Virus record (IMG/VR): IMGVR_UViG_3300040801_002079 | Span: 186,001 to 250,000 of that record | DNA length: 64,000 nt | Strand: one strand, 5' to 3' | Part shown: positions 3,293 to 51,301 of the stretch, in pieces | Numbering within the stretch: the first letter of the stretch is position 1 | How the letters are laid out: each line of letters begins with the position of its first letter | Notes under the pieces: model-generated | The model's database searches: none | Told to the model about the DNA's origin: nothing | Seen by the model: only the letters and a program-made list of their open reading frames with translations | Position numbers and translations under genes: made by a program

Positions 3293-3372
3293 AATCTTGT
3301 CTCCTTGTAACTATTATAACTATTTCTAGCTAAAACTAACTATATGTAAGTATCATTAATACTATGAAATGA

Positions 3373-3399
3373 GTATACCCATCCATAGAACATTGTCAA
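3373..3399 (-). promoter_or_regulatory. sigma70-type promoter for gp32/uvsX operon
   Basis: TTGACA-N16-TATACT on minus strand. Confidence 0.65.
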
Positions 3400-3405
3400 G
3401 CACTT

Positions 3406-3957
3406 TTATCGGAAAATTTTACGTTTTATTTTCTGGAACCAACCAGCGGAAAAAACATTATCTTTTTCCAATTCATCCACCATACGAATCAAGTGCTTAC
3501 AGACTCCTGATATTTCAGATGGATTAACGGGTGCTCTATCCGTTTTCTTCACATATGGCTTCGGTGGATCAGATGCTAGAGCATTATCACGTTGATTAAA
3601 TGCAGCAAATCTATAATAGAAATCCAAGCATGTGCAACTCACTTTTACATCAGATCGATTTTTATTTATCGGCTTAAAGTAATATTCTGTTCCGTCCGGA
3701 GAAATAATCTTAGACATGCCATTATCCCCCTCGTCTTTGAATACCACATTTTCAAAAACTATTCTGGTAATGTACTTACCATTTTTAGTTCTTGCTTCCG
3801 ATTCAACCTCAAGATAATTATCATTAACGTAAGGTATAAAAACCGTATTAGTAAGAGTAACGTCAGATGCCCTGTCACTTCGTCCCGGCATTTTACTGTC
3901 GGTAGATCGTAACAGTTTATTGTACGAAATCTCTAATAATACATCATCCTTTGCCAT
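3406..3957 (-). CDS. SWIM zinc-finger protein
   Basis: VSCTCLDF...CKH; TATAAATA late promoter at 3965-3972. Confidence 0.7.
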   Translation of the reverse strand: MAKDDVLLEISYNKLLRSTDSKMPGRSDRASDVTLTNTVFIPYVNDNYLEVESEARTKNGKYITRIVFENVVFKDEGDNGMSKIISPDGTEYYFKPINKNRSDVKVSCTCLDFYYRFAAFNQRDNALASDPPKPYVKKTDRAPVNPSEISGVCKHLIRMVDELEKDNVFSAGWFQKIKRKIFR

Positions 3958-3966
3958 ATAATCTAT

Positions 3967-5553
3967 TTATACAATAAAGGGTAAACTGTCATCCGCATCT
4001 TCGACCATTTCAATGTCATCAACCGACCAGTCATCAGTGTCATCAACAGCTAAGGCATATAGCTTTTCATATGCCTGCTCATCATATTCCGCTAAATCAT
4101 CAAGCACTCTTAGTATAATAAGGTATGCGGATATACAGTCATCCGTTGAACCACTCTTTGCATTGTATGTTTTACCAGAACGGGCGAAGTTTTTCAACTC
4201 TTTTAGTAGCGTCATTGAATGTATTTTTAACTGTTTAGCCTCTATCAACATTTTCAGTTTATTGGCATACTTCAGCTTAACCGTATCAGTAGTGGTAAAA
4301 CCAAATCGTGTTTTACCCTCTTCGTGAATCATCTCTGCTCGTTCCGGGAATTCTTCGTCAACACTATAGAGTGATATTATACCTTCACCAACGCCATTAT
4401 TTTCAACGGAGAATAATATTTCACAATCGTTAGTGATGAAGAATTGAATAATTTTTTTCATCAATGTGTATATTTCAGGTGAGCTAGTGTTGTTACTTCT
4501 AAATTCCATAACTTGCTCAAGAGATGGAAACTCTACAATTTCAATAGTAGTGAAGTCCTTTCCTGTACCAGTTGAGGGGTCAACACCCATAAGGTATGTG
4601 CCACCAGCTTTTATCTGTGTAAAGAATGGGATTTCATGAAGCTTAAATAGAACATTTGATGTACCCGCGTCAAGTATTTCCTTTTCACGCTCAATGACTA
4701 TACGGTTGTCAAGTAGTGTTCCCTCGCCACCCAAGAATTCACACTCATATTCTTGCAGCCATTTACGCTCACCAAGCAACGACATTTGACCCTGCTTAAA
4801 CGCTTCATCTCTTCCGGGAGGCATATCCCATTTAATCCACTTGGGAACAAACTTAAGCATTGTTTCTTGTGACCCCTGCATTGAATCTCCAAGCTCAGCC
4901 GTTCTCCATAGCTCTGCGAACTTATCAGAATCTCCATTCGGCGTAGATGATATAATGCAGTCACCACCAGTTGACAGAGTGGGCAAGATAGCTGACCAGA
5001 ACTCTTCCTGTACGTGCTGGGGAACGAAGGCAAACTCATCACAGTACAAGAGGGAGATTGATTTACCTCGTCCTGAGCTTTCTGAGGTCGTTTCAGCGGT
5101 TATAACACTCTTGTTTTCAAACCCACAAGTATGCTTATTCCAATTCTTATCATCTATTCCGGGCTTGAGCCACTGGGGAAGCTCCTCATATGCGTTTTGA
5201 ATCTTAGCAATAATTTCTTTAGCGTTAGCAGATTTGTTTGATGCAATTAGAATATTCTTATTAGGATAAAAAATTGCTTGATGCAAAATGAATGCGCCCG
5301 TAGTTTCTGTCTTTCCAGTCTGACGGGCACTTAATAAAATATTAAATCGGTTGTTTACATAGTTATCAAGAATTTCTTCTTGGTAATCATAGAGCTTAAA
5401 AAGTATTTGTCCATCAACGGGGTGCTTGATATAAACATAGTTTCTACAGAAATATTTTACATCCCTTTTACACTTGGCAATTTCAATTAGCATTTCAGGC
5501 GTATACTCGGTTTGAGTAAACGCCTTCTTCAATTTTGTATTTGACCTAGCCAT
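3967..5553 (-). CDS. terminase large subunit (gp17-like)
   Basis: LYDYQ, ARQTGKT, LLYCDEFAF, SSTPNG, GVDPSTG nuclease motif. Confidence 0.95.
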   Translation of the reverse strand: MARSNTKLKKAFTQTEYTPEMLIEIAKCKRDVKYFCRNYVYIKHPVDGQILFKLYDYQEEILDNYVNNRFNILLSARQTGKTETTGAFILHQAIFYPNKNILIASNKSANAKEIIAKIQNAYEELPQWLKPGIDDKNWNKHTCGFENKSVITAETTSESSGRGKSISLLYCDEFAFVPQHVQEEFWSAILPTLSTGGDCIISSTPNGDSDKFAELWRTAELGDSMQGSQETMLKFVPKWIKWDMPPGRDEAFKQGQMSLLGERKWLQEYECEFLGGEGTLLDNRIVIEREKEILDAGTSNVLFKLHEIPFFTQIKAGGTYLMGVDPSTGTGKDFTTIEIVEFPSLEQVMEFRSNNTSSPEIYTLMKKIIQFFITNDCEILFSVENNGVGEGIISLYSVDEEFPERAEMIHEEGKTRFGFTTTDTVKLKYANKLKMLIEAKQLKIHSMTLLKELKNFARSGKTYNAKSGSTDDCISAYLIILRVLDDLAEYDEQAYEKLYALAVDDTDDWSVDDIEMVEDADDSLPFIV

Positions 5554-7373: not shown

Positions 7374-9281
7374 TTATAATTCACAACCCTGACCAGAAGA
7401 ACATGCCAATTCCTGACTACCAATTGTGTGATCCTCTGCTTCAGTATAATCAGAAAAATCAACACCTTTAGGCATATTCTTCAGCAATTCACTATACTCC
7501 TCATAAGTAATTTCCTGATAAGGAGCTTGTCTGTATGTACCACCATCATATGGCAAGAATGAGATGCCTGAAATCCACTTGAAGTTGTCATACACCCATG
7601 CCCCAACTTTCATCCATTCATCTTCTCGGACATATACTGTAATACTTGGCTTGTGCTCACACCAGTGTTTGGCTACAAACTTCCAGTGTTCAAGCTGATC
7701 CATTGCACTCATGTCGTTTCTGAATACAGAATCCTTTGGACCCTTAACAGGGAAAGAAAATACATAATTTGTTGGCGGATTTCCATCAAACCTTAATTCA
7801 TCTTCATAGGGGAACCCATTTTCAATCATCCACTTACCAAGGGGGTCCTTTTTGTCCTGACGAACCGTTCTAATATAATATTGTGAAAAGCGAGGATGTA
7901 AACCAGATGCTGAATTAACAAGCTGAGATACTGTGCCACTAGGCTTAACACATGTAATAGCTGCTGAAACGGGGATTCCAAGTAACTCTGAAAACTCTTC
8001 GTTTGTCTCAATAGAAACCTGCTTCATTTGCTTCAACCATGACTCCGCATGTCCGGTAGTCTTGGATAATGTTGCATGATCCATCATACCAGTCAAACTC
8101 ACGCCCAATAACCGCTCCTCTTTGGTATTACGTTCCCATGTCTTACTGAGGAATCTAAAATCAGTGAGGGTGGACTGAAGAGTTCCAAGAATAGTAGCTA
8201 GGCGAACCTTTTGCTTAAGACTATCAAGGGTGTCCCCATTACGAACAACAACTTCGGATAGGTTGCAAAACTGCTTTGACCTTAGAATAATCTCTGAACA
8301 TGGATTTGTTCCAAACTCATGTTCGGGATCGCGGCGTTCAGGAATAAGTTCCTTACATGCCTTCCGACTAAAGATTCCTCTTTCTCCCGATTTAGATTCG
8401 TACAGTGCCTGCCATTCTCTCATAAAGATTCCCATATCAGGCATCTCGGTGTAGCAAACAGAATTATTAGCTAGCGCCCTCTGTGGATTGGTCATCCACC
8501 AATCTCCATGCTTAGCCTTCTGCATACGCTCATCCGTAAGATTAGAAAGGCTGATAAGTGCTGATCGTCTTACACCACCACATACCACGATATCAGCGGT
8601 TTTACATACGATATCATGACATTCAACGGAATTTAATTTGCGTCCTAACCCCTTGATTGGATTACCATTTTTTCTTCCGGGGTTAAATCTATCAGCAATA
8701 AAATTAAAAAGGTCTTCAAGTGGTTCAGGTCCACTCGCTCTACCGCCAAAGGTTTTTAATCTTGCACCAGCGGGGCGAACTTTTGACATGTCCCACTGGG
8801 GCAGCATACCAGAATATAGCATGGCAATTAATTGCTTTAGTGCTATGGCCCAACCCATTTTAGAATCACGAACAACAATTGTTGTATCGGTTGGATGAAT
8901 TTCATCTGGAACTTCAGGTAACTCATTAATAAACTGACGCTCAACAGAAAAGCCAACGCCCGTTCCACACATCAAGATATACATAATCTCAGCAAACACA
9001 ACGGGATGGTCCACGGCAACATACGAACAATTGTACCCCGCGACATTATCACGGTCCAGAGCTTTGCCTGCCGTCATCATAGCTCTCATGGAAGGCATAA
9101 CCTCCATGTTGTAAATACCTTCTCGCAACTCATCCCATGGAATCCCATCTCTATCCTTGTTGCGCTCTTTGAAAAAATTAATATATCTATCGACAGTTTC
9201 ATCCCATGTTTCACGGCGTTGTTCTTCCGGGATAAATCTTGCGTAGCGTGATGCGTGTATATAGCGTCTATAACTATCCAT
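7374..9281 (-). CDS. nrdJ: class II (B12-dependent) ribonucleotide reductase
   Basis: YNC, GTGVGFS, RRSA, TNPCSEI, CVKPSGT, C-terminal CSSGQGC. Confidence 0.92.
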   Translation of the reverse strand: MDSYRRYIHASRYARFIPEEQRRETWDETVDRYINFFKERNKDRDGIPWDELREGIYNMEVMPSMRAMMTAGKALDRDNVAGYNCSYVAVDHPVVFAEIMYILMCGTGVGFSVERQFINELPEVPDEIHPTDTTIVVRDSKMGWAIALKQLIAMLYSGMLPQWDMSKVRPAGARLKTFGGRASGPEPLEDLFNFIADRFNPGRKNGNPIKGLGRKLNSVECHDIVCKTADIVVCGGVRRSALISLSNLTDERMQKAKHGDWWMTNPQRALANNSVCYTEMPDMGIFMREWQALYESKSGERGIFSRKACKELIPERRDPEHEFGTNPCSEIILRSKQFCNLSEVVVRNGDTLDSLKQKVRLATILGTLQSTLTDFRFLSKTWERNTKEERLLGVSLTGMMDHATLSKTTGHAESWLKQMKQVSIETNEEFSELLGIPVSAAITCVKPSGTVSQLVNSASGLHPRFSQYYIRTVRQDKKDPLGKWMIENGFPYEDELRFDGNPPTNYVFSFPVKGPKDSVFRNDMSAMDQLEHWKFVAKHWCEHKPSITVYVREDEWMKVGAWVYDNFKWISGISFLPYDGGTYRQAPYQEITYEEYSELLKNMPKGVDFSDYTEAEDHTIGSQELACSSGQGCEL

Positions 9282-25086: not shown

Positions 25087-26274
25087 TTAATTTAGATCAG
25101 CTAATAAATCATCTTTTCCTAATGTAAAGCCAGATTCAGTCCATTTAGATTTAAGAGAATTTAATATTCGCCCAAGTTCTGGTCCCGGCGATATGCCTAA
25201 TCTCTTTAAATCTTCACCATTGACTGGAAAAGTAGGGGCATCCCAATTTTGAAACTTATTCGCAGCCCCATTTTTATTCTTATACACAAGCAGAGCGTGA
25301 ACAAGATTTTTCTTTATTCTCAGCATGATATGCATTTTCTTAGCTAGAGTTAAATTGATGTCCTTATCACGATGCTGTAATATGGTTTTCATCATTTCAT
25401 ATTCTGGGTTACTGAATTTCCACCGTGACCTTACATCATTCAACTCATCGACTGAACTTAATAACGATGCCATTAATAGGTTTGGGTCCTTTGTATTATT
25501 GTAAACTCGACTGAACTCCTTGAGGTTTGGATTGGGTAATCCAATATTATTCATAACCCCAGACTCTTTCATCTTGGACAATATTAAAGGGGCATGATTG
25601 CCTGAAAGGATTTTTGCCATTTCCATCCATATCCTTTCACCGCTTATTCTTTTCAAGCCTTCTGCATTTTTTGCAATCTTGGATAGGGTGTCCTTATCAA
25701 AGTTAGGAGACTCGGTTCGACCCTGAAATCTAAAATATCTAAGAATTCTTAAAAAATCTTCCTGCATTCTGGAATCAGCATCCCCAACAAATCTCGCTGT
25801 ACCAGATTTCAAATCCTCATGACCCCCATGATAATCATATAGATTACCATCAAAGTCCATGCTCATAGCGTTAAAAGTGAGGTCCCTTCTTTCCGCATCC
25901 TGTTCCCAATCTTTGGTATACTCAACTTCAGCATGTCTGCCATCAGTTTCAACATCTATGCGAAGCGTTGTTATTTCGTAATCCTCGCCATCAATGTGAG
26001 CAACCACTGTGCCGTGCTGTAGCCCCGTTTCAATCACTCTTATATCATTGGCCTTAAGTAACTCCATACTCTCGTTAGGAGTCGCATCTGTGGCTAAATC
26101 AATGTCCTTAGGCTCCTTATCCATAAGTATGTCACGCACAGCGCCACCAACAATTCGAAGTTCGTGTCCGTTTTGCTTATAAAGCTGATTAAGGCGTAAC
26201 AAATTCTTATCCAACAATCTGTTAAGAGTTTGCTTCTTATTTGTTACTTGCTCTAAGAGAATACTAAGTTTCAT
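25087..26274 (-). CDS. cca: CCA-adding tRNA nucleotidyltransferase
   Basis: VGGAVRD, DIDLAT, EITTLR, RRDLTFNA, EDFLRILR, ISGERI. Confidence 0.93.
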   Translation of the reverse strand: MKLSILLEQVTNKKQTLNRLLDKNLLRLNQLYKQNGHELRIVGGAVRDILMDKEPKDIDLATDATPNESMELLKANDIRVIETGLQHGTVVAHIDGEDYEITTLRIDVETDGRHAEVEYTKDWEQDAERRDLTFNAMSMDFDGNLYDYHGGHEDLKSGTARFVGDADSRMQEDFLRILRYFRFQGRTESPNFDKDTLSKIAKNAEGLKRISGERIWMEMAKILSGNHAPLILSKMKESGVMNNIGLPNPNLKEFSRVYNNTKDPNLLMASLLSSVDELNDVRSRWKFSNPEYEMMKTILQHRDKDINLTLAKKMHIMLRIKKNLVHALLVYKNKNGAANKFQNWDAPTFPVNGEDLKRLGISPGPELGRILNSLKSKWTESGFTLGKDDLLADLN

Positions 26275-30735: not shown

Positions 30736-31845
30736 ATGAAATTATATTTTTACAATACACTACTGAACATTATGAAAATGTTTATCCAATGTGATAGACC
30801 ACTAAGCCATAAGAACTATAAAAAGATATACAAAAAGAAACTATACTTTGAATTAAAGCAAAAACATGATTTTAAAGAATTTGATTTATGGTTTAATCGT
30901 ACATGGAAGTATGCGATTTTAGACAATACCAATAGTGACACATTTGTTGGCTCAGTTATAGAATCTACTATCCTATTAATGAAGCAGTTTAGCCTCAGAC
31001 ATGTGTGTGGAATTCAACCACTTAACGGTCCAGTTGGGTCGGCATATACACTATCAATTACCCGCAATGACACCAATCCATCCAAAATGTGTTTAGAAGT
31101 CATAGCAAACAGTGTACAAGCGGAAGCCAAGCGGCTGAATACCCAATATACCCTTGAGGCTGCACAGGATTTAAAGACGCATCATAATATTGATTTACAT
31201 CAAGACTTGAATGAGATGATATCTCAATCCATTGACGCAGAATTTATGGAAGAATTTATATCCGAAGTAAAAGAAAAGTCCCCCATTAAAGAAACTTTCA
31301 CTATGGACACCATAAATGCAAATACCATGGAACTGCTGCACGGTCAAATTAATATCATAGCTAGTAAAATTGCAATGATAACACGCCGGGGTGCGGGCAA
31401 TGTCATCTTCACATCCCCCTATATTGCTGCCCTACTTGAAGAATATGGACACATCAAACCGAATAGTTATAATTCAGACCTAGATAGTTTAAACCTTCGA
31501 CACGTTGGGCTTCTCAACCAGAAAAGAGACATTCAGGTATATTCATATAATGGTGCAGAACCTGAATTTCTAATGATGGGATATAAGGGGTTGAACGAAA
31601 CCGATGCGGGTCTAATTTTCTGCCCGTATATACCAATACTGTCCACTGGAGTTGTTATGGATAAGGAAACGTTTAACCCCACTGTTACATTTATGACTCG
31701 CTATGGAAGGCAGGCAGTTAATGATACCACCGAATCATGGGAAATGGAAAACAACAATCGCTTCATCTATTATGGTATATTGGATTTGAAATTACCGGAA
31801 GCATATGAGGGTGACGCTCAGTTACTGATGGAAAACGCTGCATAA
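30736..31845 (+). CDS. second, divergent gp23-family capsid protein
   Basis: CGIQPLNGPVG, YTLEAAQDL, TRRGAGN, FCPYIP, FMTRYG; own sigma70 promoter TTGACT-N17-TACACT. Confidence 0.85.
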   Translation: MKLYFYNTLLNIMKMFIQCDRPLSHKNYKKIYKKKLYFELKQKHDFKEFDLWFNRTWKYAILDNTNSDTFVGSVIESTILLMKQFSLRHVCGIQPLNGPVGSAYTLSITRNDTNPSKMCLEVIANSVQAEAKRLNTQYTLEAAQDLKTHHNIDLHQDLNEMISQSIDAEFMEEFISEVKEKSPIKETFTMDTINANTMELLHGQINIIASKIAMITRRGAGNVIFTSPYIAALLEEYGHIKPNSYNSDLDSLNLRHVGLLNQKRDIQVYSYNGAEPEFLMMGYKGLNETDAGLIFCPYIPILSTGVVMDKETFNPTVTFMTRYGRQAVNDTTESWEMENNNRFIYYGILDLKLPEAYEGDAQLLMENAA

Positions 31846-33905: not shown

Positions 33906-34685
33906 TTAACTATTACGCCGCCGCAATATCTTAATATTACGATCTTTCAACTTCTTTGACAAATACGCTGATCCCACTCTATCCTGTCCCTTGGATATAT
34001 TAAAATGTCTTAAGGTTTTACTAACAGACCCATTAGTATTAAAAACCTCAATAATTTGGTCCATATTGTCATCAATCCATTTATAATGTGGTGCCCTATA
34101 ATACATCCTGCATTTTTTACTACAAAACCTATGCTTGCCATAAGTAGTAAAAGATTCACCACAAAACTGACAATCTTTAGTTACAGCACACTTTTCCTTT
34201 TTATAGGTTATCTCCCTTATAGCATTATTAAAACTAGCGGAACAACTTGCATTACAAAATTGATTCAATCTTTTCTCATATGGTAACTCACTATTGCACT
34301 GGGTGCACCGCTTCGGGTTATTTTCATATTCCTCTCGTATGAGTTTAGCCTTTGCATAAGCCCCGTTGCGTCCTCGTTGAGCGTAGTCATCACTGGACGT
34401 TAAATCATTTACATGATCCCATCCACCACTTCCTCCGTTCTTAATATTATATGAATCTGGATCACCGGGATCAACCAATTCAAATTCCATTAAAAACATG
34501 TCTTCCGGGTTATCAAACACAGCTAAAATTTCTTTCTCAAAATTCTCAATTCCGTATTTTTTAATGGCTCTTTTTAAAACCTTACCTGAACCCATATACC
34601 CATCATCTAAATTAACGGTCTTATGGCAACCTATATAAAACCTGCCGTTAACTTTATTCATTATCTTGTAAACTATAAAATGCAT
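33906..34685 (-). mobile_element. GIY-YIG (Seg-like) homing endonuclease
   Basis: [28 protein letters not shown]; start at MHFIVY after CATAAATA. Confidence 0.85.
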
Positions 34686-34749
34686 AATAGTATTTATGCA
34701 TTTTGTAAACGCAAGATAACGTTTCGACTGACATGACATCAGTCCAATG

Positions 34750-38163: not shown

Positions 38164-38251
38164 TGGTGGGACCGGCAGGATTCGAACCTGCAATGGGATT
38201 TCTCCGCCTGATTAAGAGTCAGGTACCTTCAGCCAATTCGGTCACGATCCC
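38164..38251 (-). tRNA. tRNA-Lys(CTT) with long variable arm
   Basis: loop CTCTTAA, 15-nt variable region, CCA. Confidence 0.85.
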
Positions 38252-38396: not shown

Positions 38397-39869
38397 CTAT
38401 TTAAAATCATGAAAGAGCCACCAGTTAATCTTTTTGCCTGTTCTTATGGTGAACACCTTGGCAACATGTCTAGCCCCGAACGCCATAGCAAACAATAACG
38501 CCAATAGAATACCAAACCATGTATGTTGCACAAAGGCAAAATATAAAAAGTTTTCAAAAGTCGATGGGACGAGTGTCATAAACCCATTATATAAGCGAGA
38601 ATTAACACTTGGATCAAATTCAGAAGAACTGAAATACCAAACCAATATTGCAGTAAATAGAGTCAATTCCGTTATGACATGATATAGCACAGTTCGAATC
38701 ATATGCAACATGTTAATTCTGGATTTCAGTTTTTTAACATCATCAACGCCCACTTCGTACACGATAGGTGGTTGATCTTGTTTTGTTCCAACAATTTCAA
38801 ATTTATTGGGAAACACTGGTGCATATCTTCTTAATGAAATTCGTTCAAACACAGAGTCATGTATTTTTATATTACCCTCAACCATCGTCTCAGATATATC
38901 CCGTATATGACGAGGAGAATATCTATAATATCCCATTATCCCACGCCGTGAATCTGGTAGTGAGCCACCGGGGTTCATTCCATCTTTAACATCTGACCAT
39001 AAATTAGGGTTAAATATCACCCCATGAGATGCTGCCCTTTCCATCATCCAGTCTAGTGTAATCATTGATAAGCCTGTACGCTCTAATCCGCCTCCCACAT
39101 TACTGTGTCCTCCTGCAAACCAGACTTGTTCAATGTGTTGAGGACGTTCTGTATCATTTTCATTCCATAGGTTAGGATGAAAAGACTTTCTTTCATCATC
39201 TATAGCTAATGCATGATATGCGTGTTTTACATTTTTATCCAATTGAAATTCATAGTATCGATGAGGGAAAAATACATTTGTTATTTTATCTATGAGCATT
39301 GATAAGCCGATCACAAGCCAAGAAGAGTCTTTAGGGAATCCCAGTGCTTCAACTGTGTCCCATGCACCAATCATTTCAATGTCCACACTTCCGTGGGTTT
39401 TCCTAGCTTTAAAATCTTCTAGTTCGTCTTTGTACTTTTCAGAACGTTTATATAGACGCAAAGCTTTTAAACACTCAATTGTAAATTTAATTCTATCCAA
39501 TCTACCGCTCGTGGTTACAACTTTAGAATCTTTCTTTAAAAGACCAACCCTCTGTATCATACCGACTGCTGCCCTAACTGTAGCGGCTCCGCGACTGAAC
39601 CCGAAGAAAAATATTTTATCTCCCGGTTCATAATGCCTAGCTAGATATCCATAAAGATTTAATACATTTTTTTGAAAACCGAAGCCAAATGCTCCAGACA
39701 GTAAACGCATAAAACCTAAGCCCTTTGAGCCTATACCATCATCATAGTATGCAATCTGGGTTGTATTCTGTGTATCTACAGCCTTATAAAGCTGAAACAC
39801 ATTGGTGTTGAGTATTGCTCCGCCAGCCTTACCTGTACCATCTGAGCATAAAATAATATTCTTGGACAT
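38397..39869 (-). CDS. DUF2235/Tle1-like alpha/beta hydrolase with C-terminal TM helices
   Basis: LCSDGT, GFSRGAA, WDTV, HALAIDDER, QVWFAGGHSNVGGG. Confidence 0.9.
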   Translation of the reverse strand: MSKNIILCSDGTGKAGGAILNTNVFQLYKAVDTQNTTQIAYYDDGIGSKGLGFMRLLSGAFGFGFQKNVLNLYGYLARHYEPGDKIFFFGFSRGAATVRAAVGMIQRVGLLKKDSKVVTTSGRLDRIKFTIECLKALRLYKRSEKYKDELEDFKARKTHGSVDIEMIGAWDTVEALGFPKDSSWLVIGLSMLIDKITNVFFPHRYYEFQLDKNVKHAYHALAIDDERKSFHPNLWNENDTERPQHIEQVWFAGGHSNVGGGLERTGLSMITLDWMMERAASHGVIFNPNLWSDVKDGMNPGGSLPDSRRGIMGYYRYSPRHIRDISETMVEGNIKIHDSVFERISLRRYAPVFPNKFEIVGTKQDQPPIVYEVGVDDVKKLKSRINMLHMIRTVLYHVITELTLFTAILVWYFSSSEFDPSVNSRLYNGFMTLVPSTFENFLYFAFVQHTWFGILLALLFAMAFGARHVAKVFTIRTGKKINWWLFHDFK

Positions 39870-39887
39870 GAATATATTTATTTAAAT

Positions 39888-39975
39888 TGGTGGGACCGGC
39901 AGGATTCGAACCTGCAACGGGATTTCTCCTCCGGATTAAAAGTCCGGTACCTTCAGCCAATTCGGTCACGATCCC
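39888..39975 (-). tRNA. tRNA-Lys(TTT) with long variable arm
   Basis: near-identical to 38164-38251, loop CTTTTAA. Confidence 0.85.
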
Positions 39976-42817: not shown

Positions 42818-42903
42818 TGGAGCGGGTACGCGGAATCGAACCGCAAGTCCTAACGGAATCGGGGTGGAAGCCCGACAGCGACACCAGATAGCTCAGTACC
42901 CGC
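42818..42903 (-). tRNA. tRNA-Gly(TCC) with long variable arm
   Basis: GCGGGTA acceptor, U73, loop CTTCCAC, V-arm TTCCGTTAGGACT. Confidence 0.8.
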
Positions 42904-44849: not shown

Positions 44850-45006
44850 ATACAATGTGATCACGGGCGTGTTATTTAACCGCTAACGGACCCACTCAAC
44901 CTATTCCATTGTATACGTGCCACCATTGAGCTTGTGGCGTTAAAGTTCTTCCGCATTCTGACCATCCCGGAATCGCGTGATACTTCATTGTCAGCATCCG
45001 TATCAC
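44850..45006 (-). ncRNA. structured ncRNA candidate with two loop-loop pseudoknots
   Basis: four stems, complementary loops CTGAC/GTCAG and CTCAA/TTGAG. Confidence 0.5.
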
Positions 45007-45176
45007 TCTGATAACGACTTTCCCTTTAACAACTTAGATAACAATCTGCGCAAAAGAGTTTGTTTCTCAACTTCACGCTTTCTTAGTGCATAATAGTGTA
45101 ACATAGCTTTCTTGCCTTGTCTACTACGTAATATCATGTCTAACTGCTTCTTGTTCATGCCTGTGTCTCCCGTGTT

Positions 45177-45238
45177 TGGTGGAACTGACCGGACTCGAAC
45201 CGGCAACTTCGCGCACTCTACCGTTGAGCTACAGTCCC
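45177..45238 (-). ncRNA. anticodon-arm-less tRNA-Ala-like RNA
   Basis: acceptor with G3:U70 and A73-CCA, D arm, T arm; only 10 nt between D and T arms. Confidence 0.8.
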
Positions 45239-45540
45239 TATCGTGGTGGTCGTGTTTTTACCACTTCCGAAAATTCATCTTTGTCCAAGTACCAAAATGG
45301 ACTAGATGGTTTAAATCCATGCTGTTCCAATATTGCAAGATCAGCTTTAGTTAAGTAATACATCTTTAGATAATCTTCGGGATGTAAGACTGTATGTGAT
45401 ATCAGCCTGAGTGCGTTGGTCATATTACTATCATCCCATCCACTAGACCCCAACATTCTCACAACCATGTAGATTATCAGGCTGATGCTGCCTGCTAAAA
45501 AAAGTATAACACCTAAACATATCAACATTGCAATTGTCAT
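45238..45540 (-). CDS. membrane protein
   Basis: N-terminal TM, GGAG RBS. Confidence 0.6.
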   Translation of the reverse strand: MTIAMLICLGVILFLAGSISLIIYMVVRMLGSSGWDDSNMTNALRLISHTVLHPEDYLKMYYLTKADLAILEQHGFKPSSPFWYLDKDEFSEVVKTRPPR

Positions 45541-45570: not shown

Positions 45571-45663
45571 TGGTAGTAGGGGAGGGATTCGAACCCATCA
45601 CCAACCTCTAATCTGGAGTTCGAGATTATAAATCTCGTCGTGCTACCGTTACACCACCCTACC
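45571..45663 (-). tRNA. tRNA-Ile(TAT) with long variable arm
   Basis: loop TTTATAA, V-arm AACTCCAGATTAGAGGTT, CCA. Confidence 0.8.
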
Positions 45664-45763: not shown

Positions 45764-45840
45764 TGGTGGACCTAGACGGACTCGAACCGACATCAGCTAC
45801 ATTGCAAATGTAGAGCTTTCCCAAATTAAGCTACAGGCCC
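45764..45840 (-). tRNA. tRNA-Ala(TGC) second copy
   Basis: G3:U70, loop TTTGCAA. Confidence 0.92.
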
Positions 45841-46599: not shown

Positions 46600-46675
46600 T
46601 GGCAGGCGAGGAGGGCCTCGAACCCCCAACCTGCGGTTTTGGAGACCGCTGCTCTTCCAATTAAGCTACTCGCCT
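46600..46675 (-). tRNA. tRNA-Trp(CCA)
   Basis: loop CTCCAAA, CCA. Confidence 0.95.
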
Positions 46676-47283
46676 ATTTTCTTACAATTCTCAAAATGCC
46701 ACCTAGTCATTCCATTTTGTACACCACGCAATCCACAATGGGGGCAAGTTACATATATCTTTTCTTTCAACTTTAATGATTCGCTAATTTTATTTATATG
46801 TTCTAGTGTTTTTGGTTTCGAAGCAGCTTTTGATGCATGGGACTTTTGTGCTAAAGGGTCGCGCCTAGACCAGTGATTCTTCGACATTAGGTGGCGAGTT
46901 TTATCTGATACTGGTGGTCGCTTTAACGCTGCTTGCCGAATCTTATTCTTTGTTTCAAAATTATGGGATTTACCACTAAATGCACCAATAATTCCGGGAT
47001 TACCTCCACTTCCGCCAACTTTTAAATTATAACATAACGGGCTATTAACTACCGATTCATTAACCAAGCTTCGCTCAATATAAAACATCTCTTCCTTAGT
47101 ATCAACCACGGCTAAAATTTCTTTCTCAAAATTCTCAATTCCATATTTTTTAATGGCTCGTTTCAAAACCTTGCCCGAACCCATATACCCATCATTTAAA
47201 TCAACGGTCTTATGGCAACCTATATAAAACCTACCGTTGATTTTATTTGTTATCTTATAAACAATGTATTTAATGTCTATCAT
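46666..47283 (-). mobile_element. GIY-YIG (Seg-like) homing endonuclease with NUMOD3-like repeats
   Basis: [17 protein letters not shown]; N-terminus near-identical to 33906-34685; TATAAATA upstream. Confidence 0.85.
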
Positions 47284-47304
47284 GTATGTATTTATACTAA
47301 TATT

Positions 47305-47356
47305 TGGTGGGGAAGCCAGAACGAGCCGTTGGCCCGCGTGTGTACACACCCTCCCC
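47305..47356 (-). ncRNA. 52-nt mini RNA with acceptor-like stem and ACCA
   Basis: GGGGAGG...CTTCCCC-ACCA. Confidence 0.6.
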
Positions 47357-47362
47357 ATTGTT

Positions 47363-47452
47363 TGGTACTCTGGGTCGGACTCGAACCGACACGGGCACAC
47401 ACGGCCCACTGGATTTTAAATCCAGCGCGACTACCAATTTCGCCACCAGAGC
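47363..47452 (-). tRNA. tRNA-Leu(TAA)
   Basis: loop TTTAAAA, long V-arm. Confidence 0.93.
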
Positions 47453-51107: not shown

Positions 51108-51219
51108 CTATTTATGATATTACAAATAAGTATGGAAGTCAAGTTGACAATGGCAGTTGCCGCATTGCCTTCCGTCCCCGACACCTGTTCACACACTGCC
51201 ATGCATTATGCGGTGCCTC

Positions 51220-51292
51220 ACACCCCGACAGGAGTCGAACCTGCAACCGAGAGCTACTATGCCCCCAACTCTGCCGTTGAGTTTACGGAGTA
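51220..51292 (-). pseudogene. tRNA-like element with aberrant anticodon loop, no CCA
   Basis: acceptor TACTCCG/CGGGGTG, D and T arms, 6- or 8-nt loop around ATAGTA. Confidence 0.6.
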
Positions 51293-51301
51293 TTTCTAAT
51301 T

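What the first reader, a model, noticed from the sequence alone, without database searches (positions are those of the whole stretch)
45177..45238. Anticodon-less tRNA with intact alanine identity
Seen: GGGACTG-TA-GCTCAACGGTAGAGT-GCGCGAAGTT-GCCGGTTCGAGTCCGGT-CAGTTCC-ACCA. The acceptor, D and T arms are intact with G3:U70 and A73, but the whole anticodon arm is missing. Established: AlaRS needs only G3:U70, as in the tmRNA tRNA-like domain. Inference: a chargeable mini-tRNA immune to anticodon nucleases. It could be a decoy, a ribosome-rescue or Ala-tailing adaptor, or a non-ribosomal Ala donor.
Basis: partly seen in the sequence, partly recalled or inferred. Interest (0 to 1): 0.72.

Follow-up and report, generated by a model that had tools for sequence, protein, structure and literature searches.

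The report
Phage tRNA-Ala gene without anticodon arm
A 317-kb phage carries, inside its tRNA gene array, a 62-base tRNA-shaped gene that keeps the alanine-acceptor end but has no anticodon arm; it belongs to a recurrent family seen only in phage sequences, whose role is unknown.

Summary
Window 45177-45238 (- strand) encodes a 62-nt RNA with a 7-bp acceptor stem (G1:C72, G2:C71, G3:U70), A73, an encoded CCA, and intact D and T arms. A 10-nt linker replaces tRNA positions 26-48; positions 29-41 are absent. Rfam tRNA scores it 47.6 bits; ARAGORN skips it.

It is not a private deletion.
- L351, a distant relative of this phage (proteins 36-55% identical), has the same arm-less design at 89% nucleotide identity, inside a tRNA array.
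- L349/L352 carry a copy with an identical acceptor stem.
- At least 10 other phage lineages carry such genes, with compensatory changes in the stems and G1-G3:U70 unchanged.
- This type gave no hit in 596 Gb of cellular genomes.
- No full-length tRNA-Ala parent was found.
- One clade pairs the gene with a small basic, Cys-rich ORF.

Against strict necessity: the nearest relative lacks it at the same site, and another has only a remnant there. No RNA data exist.

Best reading: a selected, non-decoding "mini-tRNA-Ala", predicted to be matured like a tRNA and probably charged by AlaRS. It most likely mimics or titrates a tRNA-Ala or tmRNA partner. The mechanism is inferred, not shown.

The nearest described analogues are the tmRNA tRNA-like domain (TLD), the TLD-only gene of phage DS6A, and tRNAs amputated by the P2 nuclease OLD.

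The parts
45177..45238 (-). Whole mini-tRNA-Ala gene, 62 nt, from G1 (45238) to the A of CCA (45177).
   Evidence: Rfam tRNA 47.6 bits; family model R1, 73.8 bits.
45232..45238 (-). Acceptor stem 5' strand, GGGACUG. G1 is also the last base of the TAG stop codon of the upstream ORF.
   Evidence: Pairs 4-7 covary across homologues while pairs 1-3 are invariant.
45215..45229 (-). D arm, GCUC-AACGGUA-GAGU, with a 7-nt D loop carrying G18 and G19.
   Evidence: The 7-nt D loop is typical of Ala-type minis (9/13) and rare in normal phage tRNAs (4/46).
45205..45214 (-). 10-nt linker G26-CGCG-AAGUU. CGCG corresponds to tRNA positions 27, 28, 42, 43; AAGUU is the variable loop 44-48. Positions 29-41 are absent.
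   Evidence: the model's anticodon arm is aligned to 0 bases. The 4-mer is a Watson-Crick palindrome in 8/8 G26-type lineages.
45188..45204 (-). T arm, GCCGG-UUCGAGU-CCGGU.
   Evidence: The stem covaries across homologues.
45181..45187 (-). Acceptor stem 3' strand, CAGUUCC, with U70 at window 45183.
   Evidence: G3:U70 is present in all 8 sequences of alignment A4; these rows were chosen as G3:U70 minis.
45177..45180 (-). Discriminator A73 plus the genomically encoded CCA.
   Evidence: Many of the phage's other tRNA genes visibly encode CCA as well (sequences shown).
45238..45540 (-). Upstream 100-aa ORF with a hydrophobic N-terminal stretch (read from the sequence as a membrane segment; not tested), phrog_28633, function unknown. 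Its stop codon overlaps G1 of the mini.
45003..45158 (-). Downstream 51-aa basic ORF. Its ATG lies 19 nt after the CCA, and a GGGAGA ribosome-binding site sits between them.
45764..45840 (-). Nearest normal tRNA-Ala(UGC), 526 nt upstream on the same strand. It shares 48 of 62 bases with the mini, so it is not a recent parent.

Best explanation
The element is a real, selected gene of a phage-specific family of tRNA-Ala derivatives that have lost the anticodon arm (here called "mini-tRNA-Ala", G26 type).

Shown:
- It lies on the coding strand in the middle of a 37-tRNA array, with no promoter or terminator of its own.
- It keeps every helix and every tertiary contact of the tRNA top half and core.
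- It keeps the complete AlaRS identity set and an encoded CCA.
- The same design persists in a distant relative of this phage and in many unrelated phages, with compensatory stem changes.

Inferred:
- It is co-transcribed with the array and cut out by RNase P and 3' processing as a stable 62-nt L-shaped RNA.
- Host AlaRS charges it, because AlaRS reads G3:U70 and A73 and ignores the anticodon.
- It can bind EF-Tu.
- It cannot decode, because it has no anticodon.

Proposed role: a non-decoding mimic of tRNA-Ala or of the tmRNA tRNA-like domain. It would occupy or titrate a factor that recognises the acceptor arm and elbow. Candidates are SmpB and trans-translation, a defence nuclease that reads the tRNA body, or a toxin that modifies the acceptor end. 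Having no anticodon stem, it could not itself be cut there. Which partner it acts on is not known.
For: Anatomy and model scores.

Not a recent copy of any tRNA of the phage: at most 50 of 62 bases identical.

Homologues with the same 10-nt linker:
- L351: 89% nucleotide identity, in a tRNA array of a phage whose proteins are 36-55% identical to ours.
- L349/L352: identical acceptor stem, 10 nt after a tRNA-Ala.
- L195, L017, L088, L014 and L208.

Covariation:
- A4: 99.3% of cells paired and 25 double-change cells against 7.9 in shuffles; G2:C71 invariant, G1:C72 in 7 of 8 and A73 in 7 of 8; G3:U70 was a selection criterion.
- A2: 53 double-change cells against 16.3.

Derived features not seen in normal tRNA-Ala: a 7-nt D loop.

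No full-length parent:
- None of 76 full-length tRNAs with this D arm is Ala.
- None among 1825 tRNAs of all the loci fetched.

Phage specificity:
- The G26-type pattern gives 0 hits in 185,579 cellular species genomes.
- None of 44 cellular 10-nt-linker hits has G3:U70, against 11 of 33 in viral contigs.

The Ala type is enriched among array-embedded minis: 8/21 against 10/79 solitary, p = 0.02.

A sister clade (C26 type) keeps the mini within 3-60 nt of a conserved ~60-aa basic Cys-rich ORF in 13 of 15 loci found from the protein side. That is the mark of a working gene pair.

Precedents:
- The DS6A TLD-only tmRNA, proposed to titrate SmpB (PMC4131195).
- OLD removes nt 29-40 and ligases give an arm-less tRNA (PMC12445682).

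The phage invests in this machinery: it has its own two-piece tmRNA and a PolyA_pol head-domain protein, probably a CCA-adding enzyme.
Against: - No expression, processing or charging data exist. The three metatranscriptomes of the sample do not hold the phage.
- At the orthologous site the nearest relative, L148 (81% aa), has no element. L156 (74-78% aa) has only a 46-nt remnant without D arm or T loop. The copy at this site is therefore dispensable in close kin.
- Across all arm-less tRNA-likes the G3:U70 share equals the background.
- In the C26 clade 4 of 13 minis have lost G3:U70. Alanylation cannot be essential for every member.
- The self-complementary 4-mer looks like a fresh deletion scar.
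- No partner protein is conserved next to G26-type minis.
- The phage encodes no SmpB, Fem-type transferase or AlaRS.
- The mini has a normal D stem and lacks the tmRNA-type D loop. The mt-tmRNA model does not hit the mini, and no tmRNA-family match was listed over it in a local Rfam scan.
Confidence: 0.5

Rival explanations
1. A neutral relic. It would be a redundant third tRNA-Ala gene caught midway through decay, after a symmetric deletion of the anticodon hairpin, with no function of its own.
For: - The phage has two normal tRNA-Ala(UGC) genes.
- The element is absent at the same site in L148 and degenerate in L156.
- The 4-mer CGCG is exactly what a symmetric hairpin deletion leaves behind.
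- tRNA-likes with partly shortened anticodon arms are also common.
- One family is annotated as a pseudo tRNA-OTHER.
- No RNA data exist.
Against: - The same architecture stands at 83-89% identity in L351 and L349, while the proteins of L351 are only 36-55% identical.
- All 16 pairs and all tertiary partners are intact.
- Stems change by compensation across lineages.
- No full-length parent is seen.
- The D loop is distinct from that of normal tRNA-Ala.
- The type is absent from cellular genomes.
- Mini families are 91-97% conserved while their flanks are about 40%.
- One clade has a conserved gene partner.
Confidence: 0.22
2. RNA punctuation. The tRNA-shaped element would serve only as an RNase P / 3'-processing site. 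It would cut the polycistronic transcript between the 100-aa and 51-aa ORFs or fix their mRNA ends; the released RNA would be a by-product.
For: - It sits exactly between two ORFs. G1 overlaps the upstream stop codon and the next ATG lies 19 nt after the CCA.
- It has no promoter or terminator of its own.
- RNase P needs only the acceptor/T helix and the elbow (established knowledge).
- Arm-less tRNA-likes of every acceptor type occur singly in small phages, often just upstream of terS/terL.
Against: - Punctuation needs neither G3:U70, A73 nor an encoded CCA. Yet G3:U70 and A73 recur across the Ala-type family (A73 in 7 of 8 G26-type and all 13 Cys-ORF-linked minis), and G3:U70 was found in 9 of 13 minis reached from the protein side.
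- The element moves between contexts: between tRNAs in L351, after a tRNA-Ala in L349.
- L148 has the same two ORFs without it.
- Cleavage at G1 would leave the upstream mRNA without its stop codon.
Confidence: 0.13
3. A trans-translation player. Charged with Ala and bound by host SmpB, it would either enter stalled ribosomes like a tag-less tmRNA (as in jakobid mitochondria), or compete with host tmRNA for SmpB in favour of the phage's own tmRNA.
For: - It is Ala-type and lacks an anticodon, like the tmRNA TLD.
- Its acceptor stem differs from that of the phage's own two-piece tmRNA at a single base pair.
- The DS6A TLD-only gene and the tmRNA inhibition by such a molecule are cited in PMC4131195.
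Against: - It has a normal D stem and no tmRNA-type D loop or P2 helix.
- The mt-tmRNA model does not hit it, and a local Rfam scan listed no tmRNA-family match over it.
- The R1 model scores the DS6A element at only 30 bits.
- The phage encodes no SmpB.
- SmpB binding cannot be tested here.
Confidence: 0.1
4. A non-ribosomal alanine donor, for example for cell-wall, lipid or peptide aminoacyl transfer, kept out of translation by its missing anticodon.
For: - Acceptor-stem helices are reported to suffice for Ala-tRNA-dependent transferases. This rests on my recollection of published FemX and alanyl-phosphatidylglycerol synthase work and was not checked here.
- Precedent: the non-proteinogenic tRNA-Gly of Staphylococcus.
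Against: - No FemAB-family gene is in the phage.
- No conserved enzyme lies next to G26-type minis.
- Some family members have lost G3:U70.
Confidence: 0.04

Closest known systems
tRNA-like domain (TLD) of tmRNA, including the TLD-only gene of mycobacteriophage DS6A and the tag-less mitochondrial tmRNA of jakobids
   Same: - Alanine acceptor with G3:U70 and A73, a T arm, and no anticodon arm.
- DS6A shows that a phage can carry such a stand-alone molecule (PMC4131195; L511 28478-28560).
- Our phage also carries a complete two-piece tmRNA whose acceptor stem differs from the mini's at one pair.
   Different: - The mini is tRNA-derived. It has a regular 4-bp D stem and 7-nt D loop, a tRNA variable loop, and no P2 helix or UCGAC-type D loop.
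- The Rfam mt-tmRNA model does not match it, and a local scan listed no tmRNA-family match over it.
- DS6A matches Rfam tmRNA at 43 bits but R1 at only 30 bits.
- SmpB dependence is unknown.
tRNA amputated by the P2 nuclease OLD and resealed by T4 RNA ligase (PMC12445682)
   Same: An RNA with intact acceptor, D and T arms in which the anticodon stem-loop is cut out at the second or third stem pair. OLD removes nt 29-40 and the ligases join nt 28 to nt 41. The mini lacks nt 29-41.
   Different: - That RNA is a damage product made in the cell. The mini is encoded as such in DNA and is inherited.
- The junction differs by one base.
- The OLD targets reported are Thr, Gly, fMet, Val and Pro tRNAs, not Ala.
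Synthetic minihelix-Ala and anticodon-deleted tRNA-Ala substrates of AlaRS (work from the Schimmel laboratory; cited from my own knowledge)
   Same: G3:U70 with A73 on an acceptor/T helix is enough for alanylation. The mini contains that and more, including the elbow that the C-Ala domain of AlaRS contacts.
   Different: Those are laboratory constructs. This is a natural, conserved gene, and its charging is untested.
Pseudo-tRNA / 'tRNA-OTHER' annotations in phage genomes (for example Lactobacillus phage 3-SAC12) and tRNA-like small RNAs such as mascRNA
   Same: - They are tRNA-shaped, are not called as tRNAs by the standard tools, and have a reduced or absent anticodon arm.
- One arm-less family found here is annotated in exactly this way.
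   Different: - Those annotations imply broken genes.
- The family described here shows covariation, phage specificity and, in one clade, a linked protein gene.
- mascRNA is eukaryotic and is not aminoacylated.

Membership tests
Canonical tRNA (Rfam RF00005) | 7-bp acceptor stem, D arm, and T arm with a UUCRA loop. | tested here: met
   16 of 16 pairs form; end-to-end match at 47.6 bits against a gathering score of 29.
Canonical tRNA (Rfam RF00005) | Anticodon stem-loop with a 7-nt loop and a readable anticodon. | tested here: not met
   13 model positions are aligned to 0 bases. ARAGORN makes no call here. It therefore cannot be filed as a decoding tRNA.
tRNA-Ala identity set (AlaRS substrate) | G3:U70 wobble pair, A73, and G1:C72/G2:C71. 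| tested here: met
   G2:C71 is invariant and G1:C72 and A73 are each in 7 of 8 G26-type homologues; G3:U70 was a selection criterion.
tRNA-Ala identity set (AlaRS substrate) | Actual aminoacylation with alanine. | not testable with these tools
   Needs an in vitro AlaRS assay or an acid-gel northern blot.
tmRNA / TLD-only tmRNA | Match to the tmRNA covariance models, a D loop without a stem, and a P2 helix. | tested here: not met
   One search listed only tRNA and an unrelated weak hit at E <= 1 (one lower-scoring same-clan match was hidden); the mt-tmRNA model does not hit it. The D stem is regular.
tmRNA / TLD-only tmRNA | Works with SmpB. | not testable with these tools
   The phage encodes no SmpB. 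Binding to host SmpB is unknown.
Arm-less 'mini-tRNA-Ala' family defined here (model R1, alignments A2 and A4) | Acceptor GGG....UCC-A, a 7-nt D loop, a 10-nt linker in place of positions 26-48, and location in a phage tRNA array on the array's strand. | tested here: met
   (73.8 bits). The model was built with this sequence included, so the score is partly circular; the homologues were found independently of it.
C26-type mini plus Cys-rich small-ORF module | An adjacent ~60-aa ORF with the motif CxxCGG..WCxxC..CC..YGTCxCS. | tested here: not met
   tblastn of 13 such ORFs against the whole phage genome found nothing below E = 0.2. The ORF next to our mini is basic but has no Cys.
OLD-type amputated tRNA | Loss of nt 29-40 with nt 28 joined to nt 41; an RNA-level product. 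| tested here: not met
   The gene lacks nt 29-41 and is encoded in DNA. It resembles that product only in shape.

The most novel reading that the evidence does not exclude
Phages carry a dedicated class of alanine-accepting, anticodon-less tRNAs. Their arm-less design has been kept for long evolutionary times, and in one clade it is paired with a small basic zinc-finger-like protein. These RNAs would act as tRNA-body or tmRNA mimics. They could disarm host systems that attack or sense tRNAs (amputating Toprim nucleases, acceptor-end toxins). Alternatively they could redirect ribosome rescue, with the partner protein standing in for the missing anticodon arm as SmpB does for tmRNA.
Probability: 0.3. 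Interest if true: 0.9.

Novelty: new variant of a known kind. Interest (0 to 1): 0.74.

Why it matters
Phage tRNA genes are currently explained as codon-usage helpers or as replacements for tRNAs that host defences cut. A conserved tRNA gene that cannot read any codon fits neither idea. It points to a use of the tRNA body itself.

If the RNA is charged and stable, it would be the first natural stand-alone "top-half" tRNA-Ala outside tmRNA. It would offer a handle on three questions:
- how phages deal with nucleases that amputate anticodon arms;
- how they deal with toxins that modify the CCA end;
- how they interact with trans-translation.

The family is also a practical annotation issue. Standard tools skip these genes or label them as pseudo-tRNAs.

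The linked Cys-rich protein gives an immediate, testable RNA-protein pair.

Tried and rejected
- **Close relatives through GenBank phages.** Only tRNA-Trp hits for the 3-kb region, and no match for the mini itself.
- **Exact 31-mer in IMG/VR.** None found.
- **Relatives through the upstream 100-aa ORF.** The 12 IMG/VR loci are only 37-57% identical and have no mini after that ORF.
- **A narrow metagenome pattern.** Zero hits.
- **Expression.** Two run searches and one read-laying run found DNA runs and three metatranscriptomes of the same mat sample. The RNA runs hold nothing of the phage, so expression stays open.
- **Phage-encoded partners.** SmpB, FemAB and AlaRS are all absent.
- **mt-tmRNA model.** No hit on the mini.
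- **A shared protein neighbour for G26-type minis.** None.
- **Dimerisation through the palindromic 4-mer.** The self-duplex energy is -3.7 to -8.5 kcal/mol for the GC-rich versions but nil for UUAA. It does not explain all members.
- **GNRA capping in the class with shortened anticodon hairpins.** Only 5 of 30 tetraloops, too few to argue from.
- **Literature.** Eight full-text searches found no description of phage-encoded anticodon-less tRNAs.
- **Not attempted.** Structure or complex prediction of the Cys-rich protein with the RNA, because the tool gives no verdict for RNA partners. No full Pfam annotation of the phage genome was made.

Full report
**1. What is there**

The window is bases 186,001-250,000 of a complete 316,801-bp phage genome with direct terminal repeats. 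It was assembled from a microbial-mat metagenome. ARAGORN tRNA genes between 21 and 54 kb of the window, all on the - strand. Rfam finds 43 tRNA matches in the whole genome.

- acceptor GGGACUG/CAGUUCC, with G1:C72, G2:C71 and G3:U70;
- U8 and A9;
- D arm GCUC-AACGGUA-GAGU;
- a 10-nt linker, GCGCGAAGUU;
- T arm GCCGG-UUCGAGU-CCGGU;
- A73 and CCA.

Rfam's tRNA model matches it end to end at 47.6 bits (cut-off 29). The inner 13 positions of the anticodon arm are aligned to nothing. ARAGORN does not call it.

Read against tRNA numbering, the linker is G26, then C27 G28 C42 G43, then the variable loop A44-U48. All the usual tertiary partners are present (U8-A14, A15-U48, G18-U55, G19-C56, U54-A58, G26-A44, C13-G22-G46), so the L-shaped core should form.

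A Logan contig assembled independently from a DNA run of the same sample spans the junction without a difference.

The element has no promoter-like or terminator-like site of its own. It lies between a 100-aa ORF with a hydrophobic N-terminus, whose TAG stop shares its G with G1, and a 51-aa basic ORF that starts 19 nt after the CCA.

**2. Is it a private deletion of a normal tRNA?**

It is not a recent copy of any tRNA in the genome. The best matches are 50/62 bases (tRNA-Ile GAU) and 48/62 (the tRNA-Ala 526 nt upstream).

At the same site in the closest relatives I could find the picture is mixed.
- L148 (upstream ORF 81% identical) has the two ORFs 24 nt apart with nothing between them.
- L156 (74% and 78% identical) has a 46-nt remnant. 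It still aligns with the 3' T-stem strand, the 3' acceptor strand and A73, but it lacks the D arm and T loop and does not fold notably.

This copy is therefore dispensable in near kin.

A metagenome scan for the design itself found two further homologues.
- L351: GGGGCUG...CAGUUCC-A-CCA, 89% identical to ours. It sits inside a tRNA array of a phage whose proteins match ours at only 36-55%.
- L349/L352: acceptor stem identical to ours, 10 nt after a tRNA-Ala(UGC).

The differences among these three are compensatory: 27:43, 28:42, 50:64 and 51:63.

**3. A family**

Pattern scans of IMG/VR showed that tRNA-likes without an anticodon arm are common. I found 91 unique ones with at least 6 of 7 acceptor pairs. 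Their linkers peak at 8-9 nt and none is shorter than 7 nt. Most are solitary, and 24 loci place them shortly upstream of the terminase genes. Three sequence families are 91-97% conserved while their 150-nt flanks are 39-93% identical, near 40% in the most diverged family. One family sits in Lactobacillus brevis phages and is annotated as pseudo tRNA-OTHER.

Across all of them G3:U70 is no more frequent (12/91) than tRNA-Ala is among comparable normal phage tRNAs (5/39). It is enriched in two subsets:
- minis with a 10-nt linker, 11/33;
- minis embedded in tRNA arrays, 8/21 against 10/79 solitary, p = 0.02.

These Ala-type minis share a 7-nt D loop (9/13) that is rare in normal phage tRNAs (4/46; 0/5 tRNA-Ala).

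Fourteen of them align with 96.8% of cells paired. There are 53 double-change cells against 16 in shuffles. G2:C71 is invariant and A73 is present in 13 of 14. One caveat applies: the rows were selected for pairing and for G3:U70.

The narrower G26 type to which our element belongs (window, L351, L349, L195, L017, L088, L014, L208) gives 99.3% paired.

Among 76 full-length tRNAs with the same D arm and the same bases at positions 5-7, none is tRNA-Ala. None of 1825 tRNAs in all the loci fetched looks like a full-length parent.

The G26 pattern has no hit in one genome each of 185,579 bacterial and archaeal species. The looser 10-nt-linker pattern gives 44 cellular loci. Most of them have no acceptor stem and none has G3:U70.

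The family model R1 scores our element at 73.8 bits, against at most 46.7 bits for the phage's normal tRNAs. It is the only copy in the genome.

**4. A linked protein in a sister clade**

In five large-phage contigs (L028, L172, L190, L191, L215) the Ala-type mini, here with C26, lies 5-10 nt from a ~60-aa ORF. That ORF has an Arg/Lys-rich N-terminal half and the motif CxxCGG..WCxxC..CC..YGTCxCS. It matches no Pfam or PHROG family.

Searching from the protein side gave 15 loci. In 13 of them a mini sits directly before or after the ORF on the same strand. Nine of the 13 keep G3:U70 and all keep A73; four have lost the wobble pair.

This shows two things. The arm-less form is old and under selection in that clade. 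Alanylation is probably ancestral but not indispensable everywhere. Our phage has no homologue of this ORF, and G26-type minis share no conserved neighbour.

**5. How it most likely works**

*Shown:* the gene's position and strand, its anatomy, its conservation and its restriction to phage sequences.

*Established from the literature:*
- RNase P and CCA-related enzymes read the acceptor/T helix and the elbow.
- AlaRS reads G3:U70 and A73 and ignores the anticodon.
- EF-Tu binds the acceptor/T helix.
- Decoding and GTPase activation on the ribosome need an anticodon arm.

*Inferred:* the RNA is cut from the array transcript as a 62-nt species with CCA and is alanylated. It cannot enter normal decoding.

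Its use is open. I favour a mimic or titrator of a factor that binds tRNA-Ala-like top halves, on two precedents.
- Phage DS6A carries a TLD-only tmRNA. A similar molecule is reported to inhibit tmRNA, perhaps by titrating SmpB (PMC4131195; I confirmed the element at L511 28478-28560).
- The P2 nuclease OLD cuts tRNAs after nt 28 and nt 40, and T4 ligases reseal an arm-less tRNA (PMC12445682). That RNA differs from our gene product by one base at the junction.

Our phage also encodes its own two-piece tmRNA, whose acceptor stem differs from the mini's at one pair, and a PolyA_pol head-domain protein that is probably a CCA-adding enzyme.

The rivals are a neutral relic, pure RNase P punctuation, a role in ribosome rescue, and a non-ribosomal alanine donor. 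They are weighed in the structured fields.

**6. What remains unexplained**

In all 8 G26-type lineages the four bases after G26 are a Watson-Crick palindrome: CGCG, CCGG, UCGA, GCGC, CUAG or UUAA. There are seven double changes among them. Nothing lies between positions 28 and 42, so these bases cannot pair within one molecule.

There are three possible readings.
- **Deletion scar.** A symmetric deletion of nt 29-41 would leave such a palindrome. That would imply recurrent independent deletions, yet no parents are seen.
- **Dimerisation.** Energetically this is plausible only for the GC-rich versions.
- **A DNA-level site.**

In the older C26 clade the palindrome is mostly gone.

**7. Verdict**

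The element is a member of a previously undescribed, phage-restricted family of arm-less tRNA-Ala genes. This is a new variant of known tRNA-like RNAs, not a new kind of molecule. Function and expression remain untested.

Noticed in passing
G000:C1:~164,000-164,365 (+), outside the window; locus L030 997-1332: The phage encodes a circularly permuted (two-piece) tmRNA. Rfam tmRNA_permuted scores 123 bits and beta_tmRNA 98.6 bits. The tag reading frame ends ...ANDSIYDQALAA. Its acceptor stem, GGGAAUG/CAUUUCC-A-CCA, differs from the mini's at one base pair.
   Followed up: partly
G000:C1:140922-140999 (+), outside the window; locus L031 923-997: An amber-suppressor-type tRNA with anticodon CUA (Rfam 61 bits). 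I did not check whether TAG is recoded anywhere in the phage.
   Followed up: no
window 25087-26274 (-): A 395-aa protein with PolyA_pol head and RNA-binding domains, probably a CCA-adding enzyme or poly(A) polymerase, beside the tRNA array.
   Followed up: no
window 51219-51293 (-), 42818-42903, 38164-38251, 39888-39975 and 45571-45663: Odd tRNAs in the array. One has a 2-nt 'anticodon' (Rfam 25 bits, below the cut-off). Several are over-long: Gly(UCC) 86 nt, Lys(CUU) and Lys(UUU) 88 nt, Ile(UAU) 93 nt. Whether this reflects introns or long variable arms was not resolved.
   Followed up: no
window 30736-31845 (+), 38397-39869 (-), 33906-34739 (-) and 46666-47409 (-): Inside the tRNA region there is a gp23-like capsid-domain ORF on the opposite strand, an intact ORF with a Tle1-like phospholipase catalytic domain, and two SegE-like GIY-YIG homing endonucleases.
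   Followed up: no
window 45238-45250 and 45177-45182: The hexamer CCACCA occurs just upstream of the mini (in ...GACCACCACGATAG|GGG) and at its 3' end (..TTCCACCA|AACACGG). Compared with L148, the extra DNA ends exactly at the CCA. This could be a trace of how the element was inserted.
   Followed up: partly
L334-L346 (for example L334 1434-1495 plus 1501-1698): A conserved gene pair in large phages: an Ala-type arm-less tRNA next to a ~60-aa basic ORF with 8 conserved Cys (CxxCGG..WCxxC..CC..YGTCxCS). The ORF matches no Pfam or PHROG family. The pair is present in 13 of 15 loci.
   Followed up: partly
L013-L147, for example L114 2983-3040 upstream of terS/terL (3306-5196): Solitary arm-less tRNA-likes of many acceptor types sit shortly upstream of the small and large terminase genes in 24 loci of ~35-60-kb phage contigs. 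They are strongly conserved relative to their flanks.
   Followed up: partly
L019 182-790; L160 1801-1989 (Lactobacillus phage 3-SAC12): One arm-less family lies beside a GOLLD RNA and tRNA-Tyr/Met in Lactobacillus brevis phages. In GenBank it is annotated as pseudo 'tRNA-OTHER'.
   Followed up: partly
L015 350-410, 2052-2113, 3556-3610 and 10701-10761; HEARO RNA at 7959-8172: A 180-kb viral contig carries four paralogous arm-less tRNA-likes with A1:U72 acceptors and compensatory changes, plus a HEARO (IS200/605-type) RNA.
   Followed up: no
L221-L333, for example L244, L242, L267: A further class of phage tRNA-likes keeps a 3-5-bp anticodon stem but caps it with a 3-5-nt loop, so they also have no anticodon. 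There are 72 unique ones with good acceptor stems; of 96 unique pattern hits, ARAGORN called only 8.
   Followed up: partly
L469, L475, L476, L478, L485 and L488 (Bacteroidota genomes): A conserved chromosomal element in Cytophagales and Chitinophagales has a tRNA-type D arm, a 10-nt linker and a T arm, but no acceptor stem. It may be the tRNA-like domain of another RNA.
   Followed up: no
L219 3381-3474 and 4121-4193 (58-kb high-GC phage carrying the L195 mini): Next to that mini ARAGORN calls a tRNA with a 4-nt anticodon (CGGC) and one with a 2-nt anticodon.
   Followed up: no
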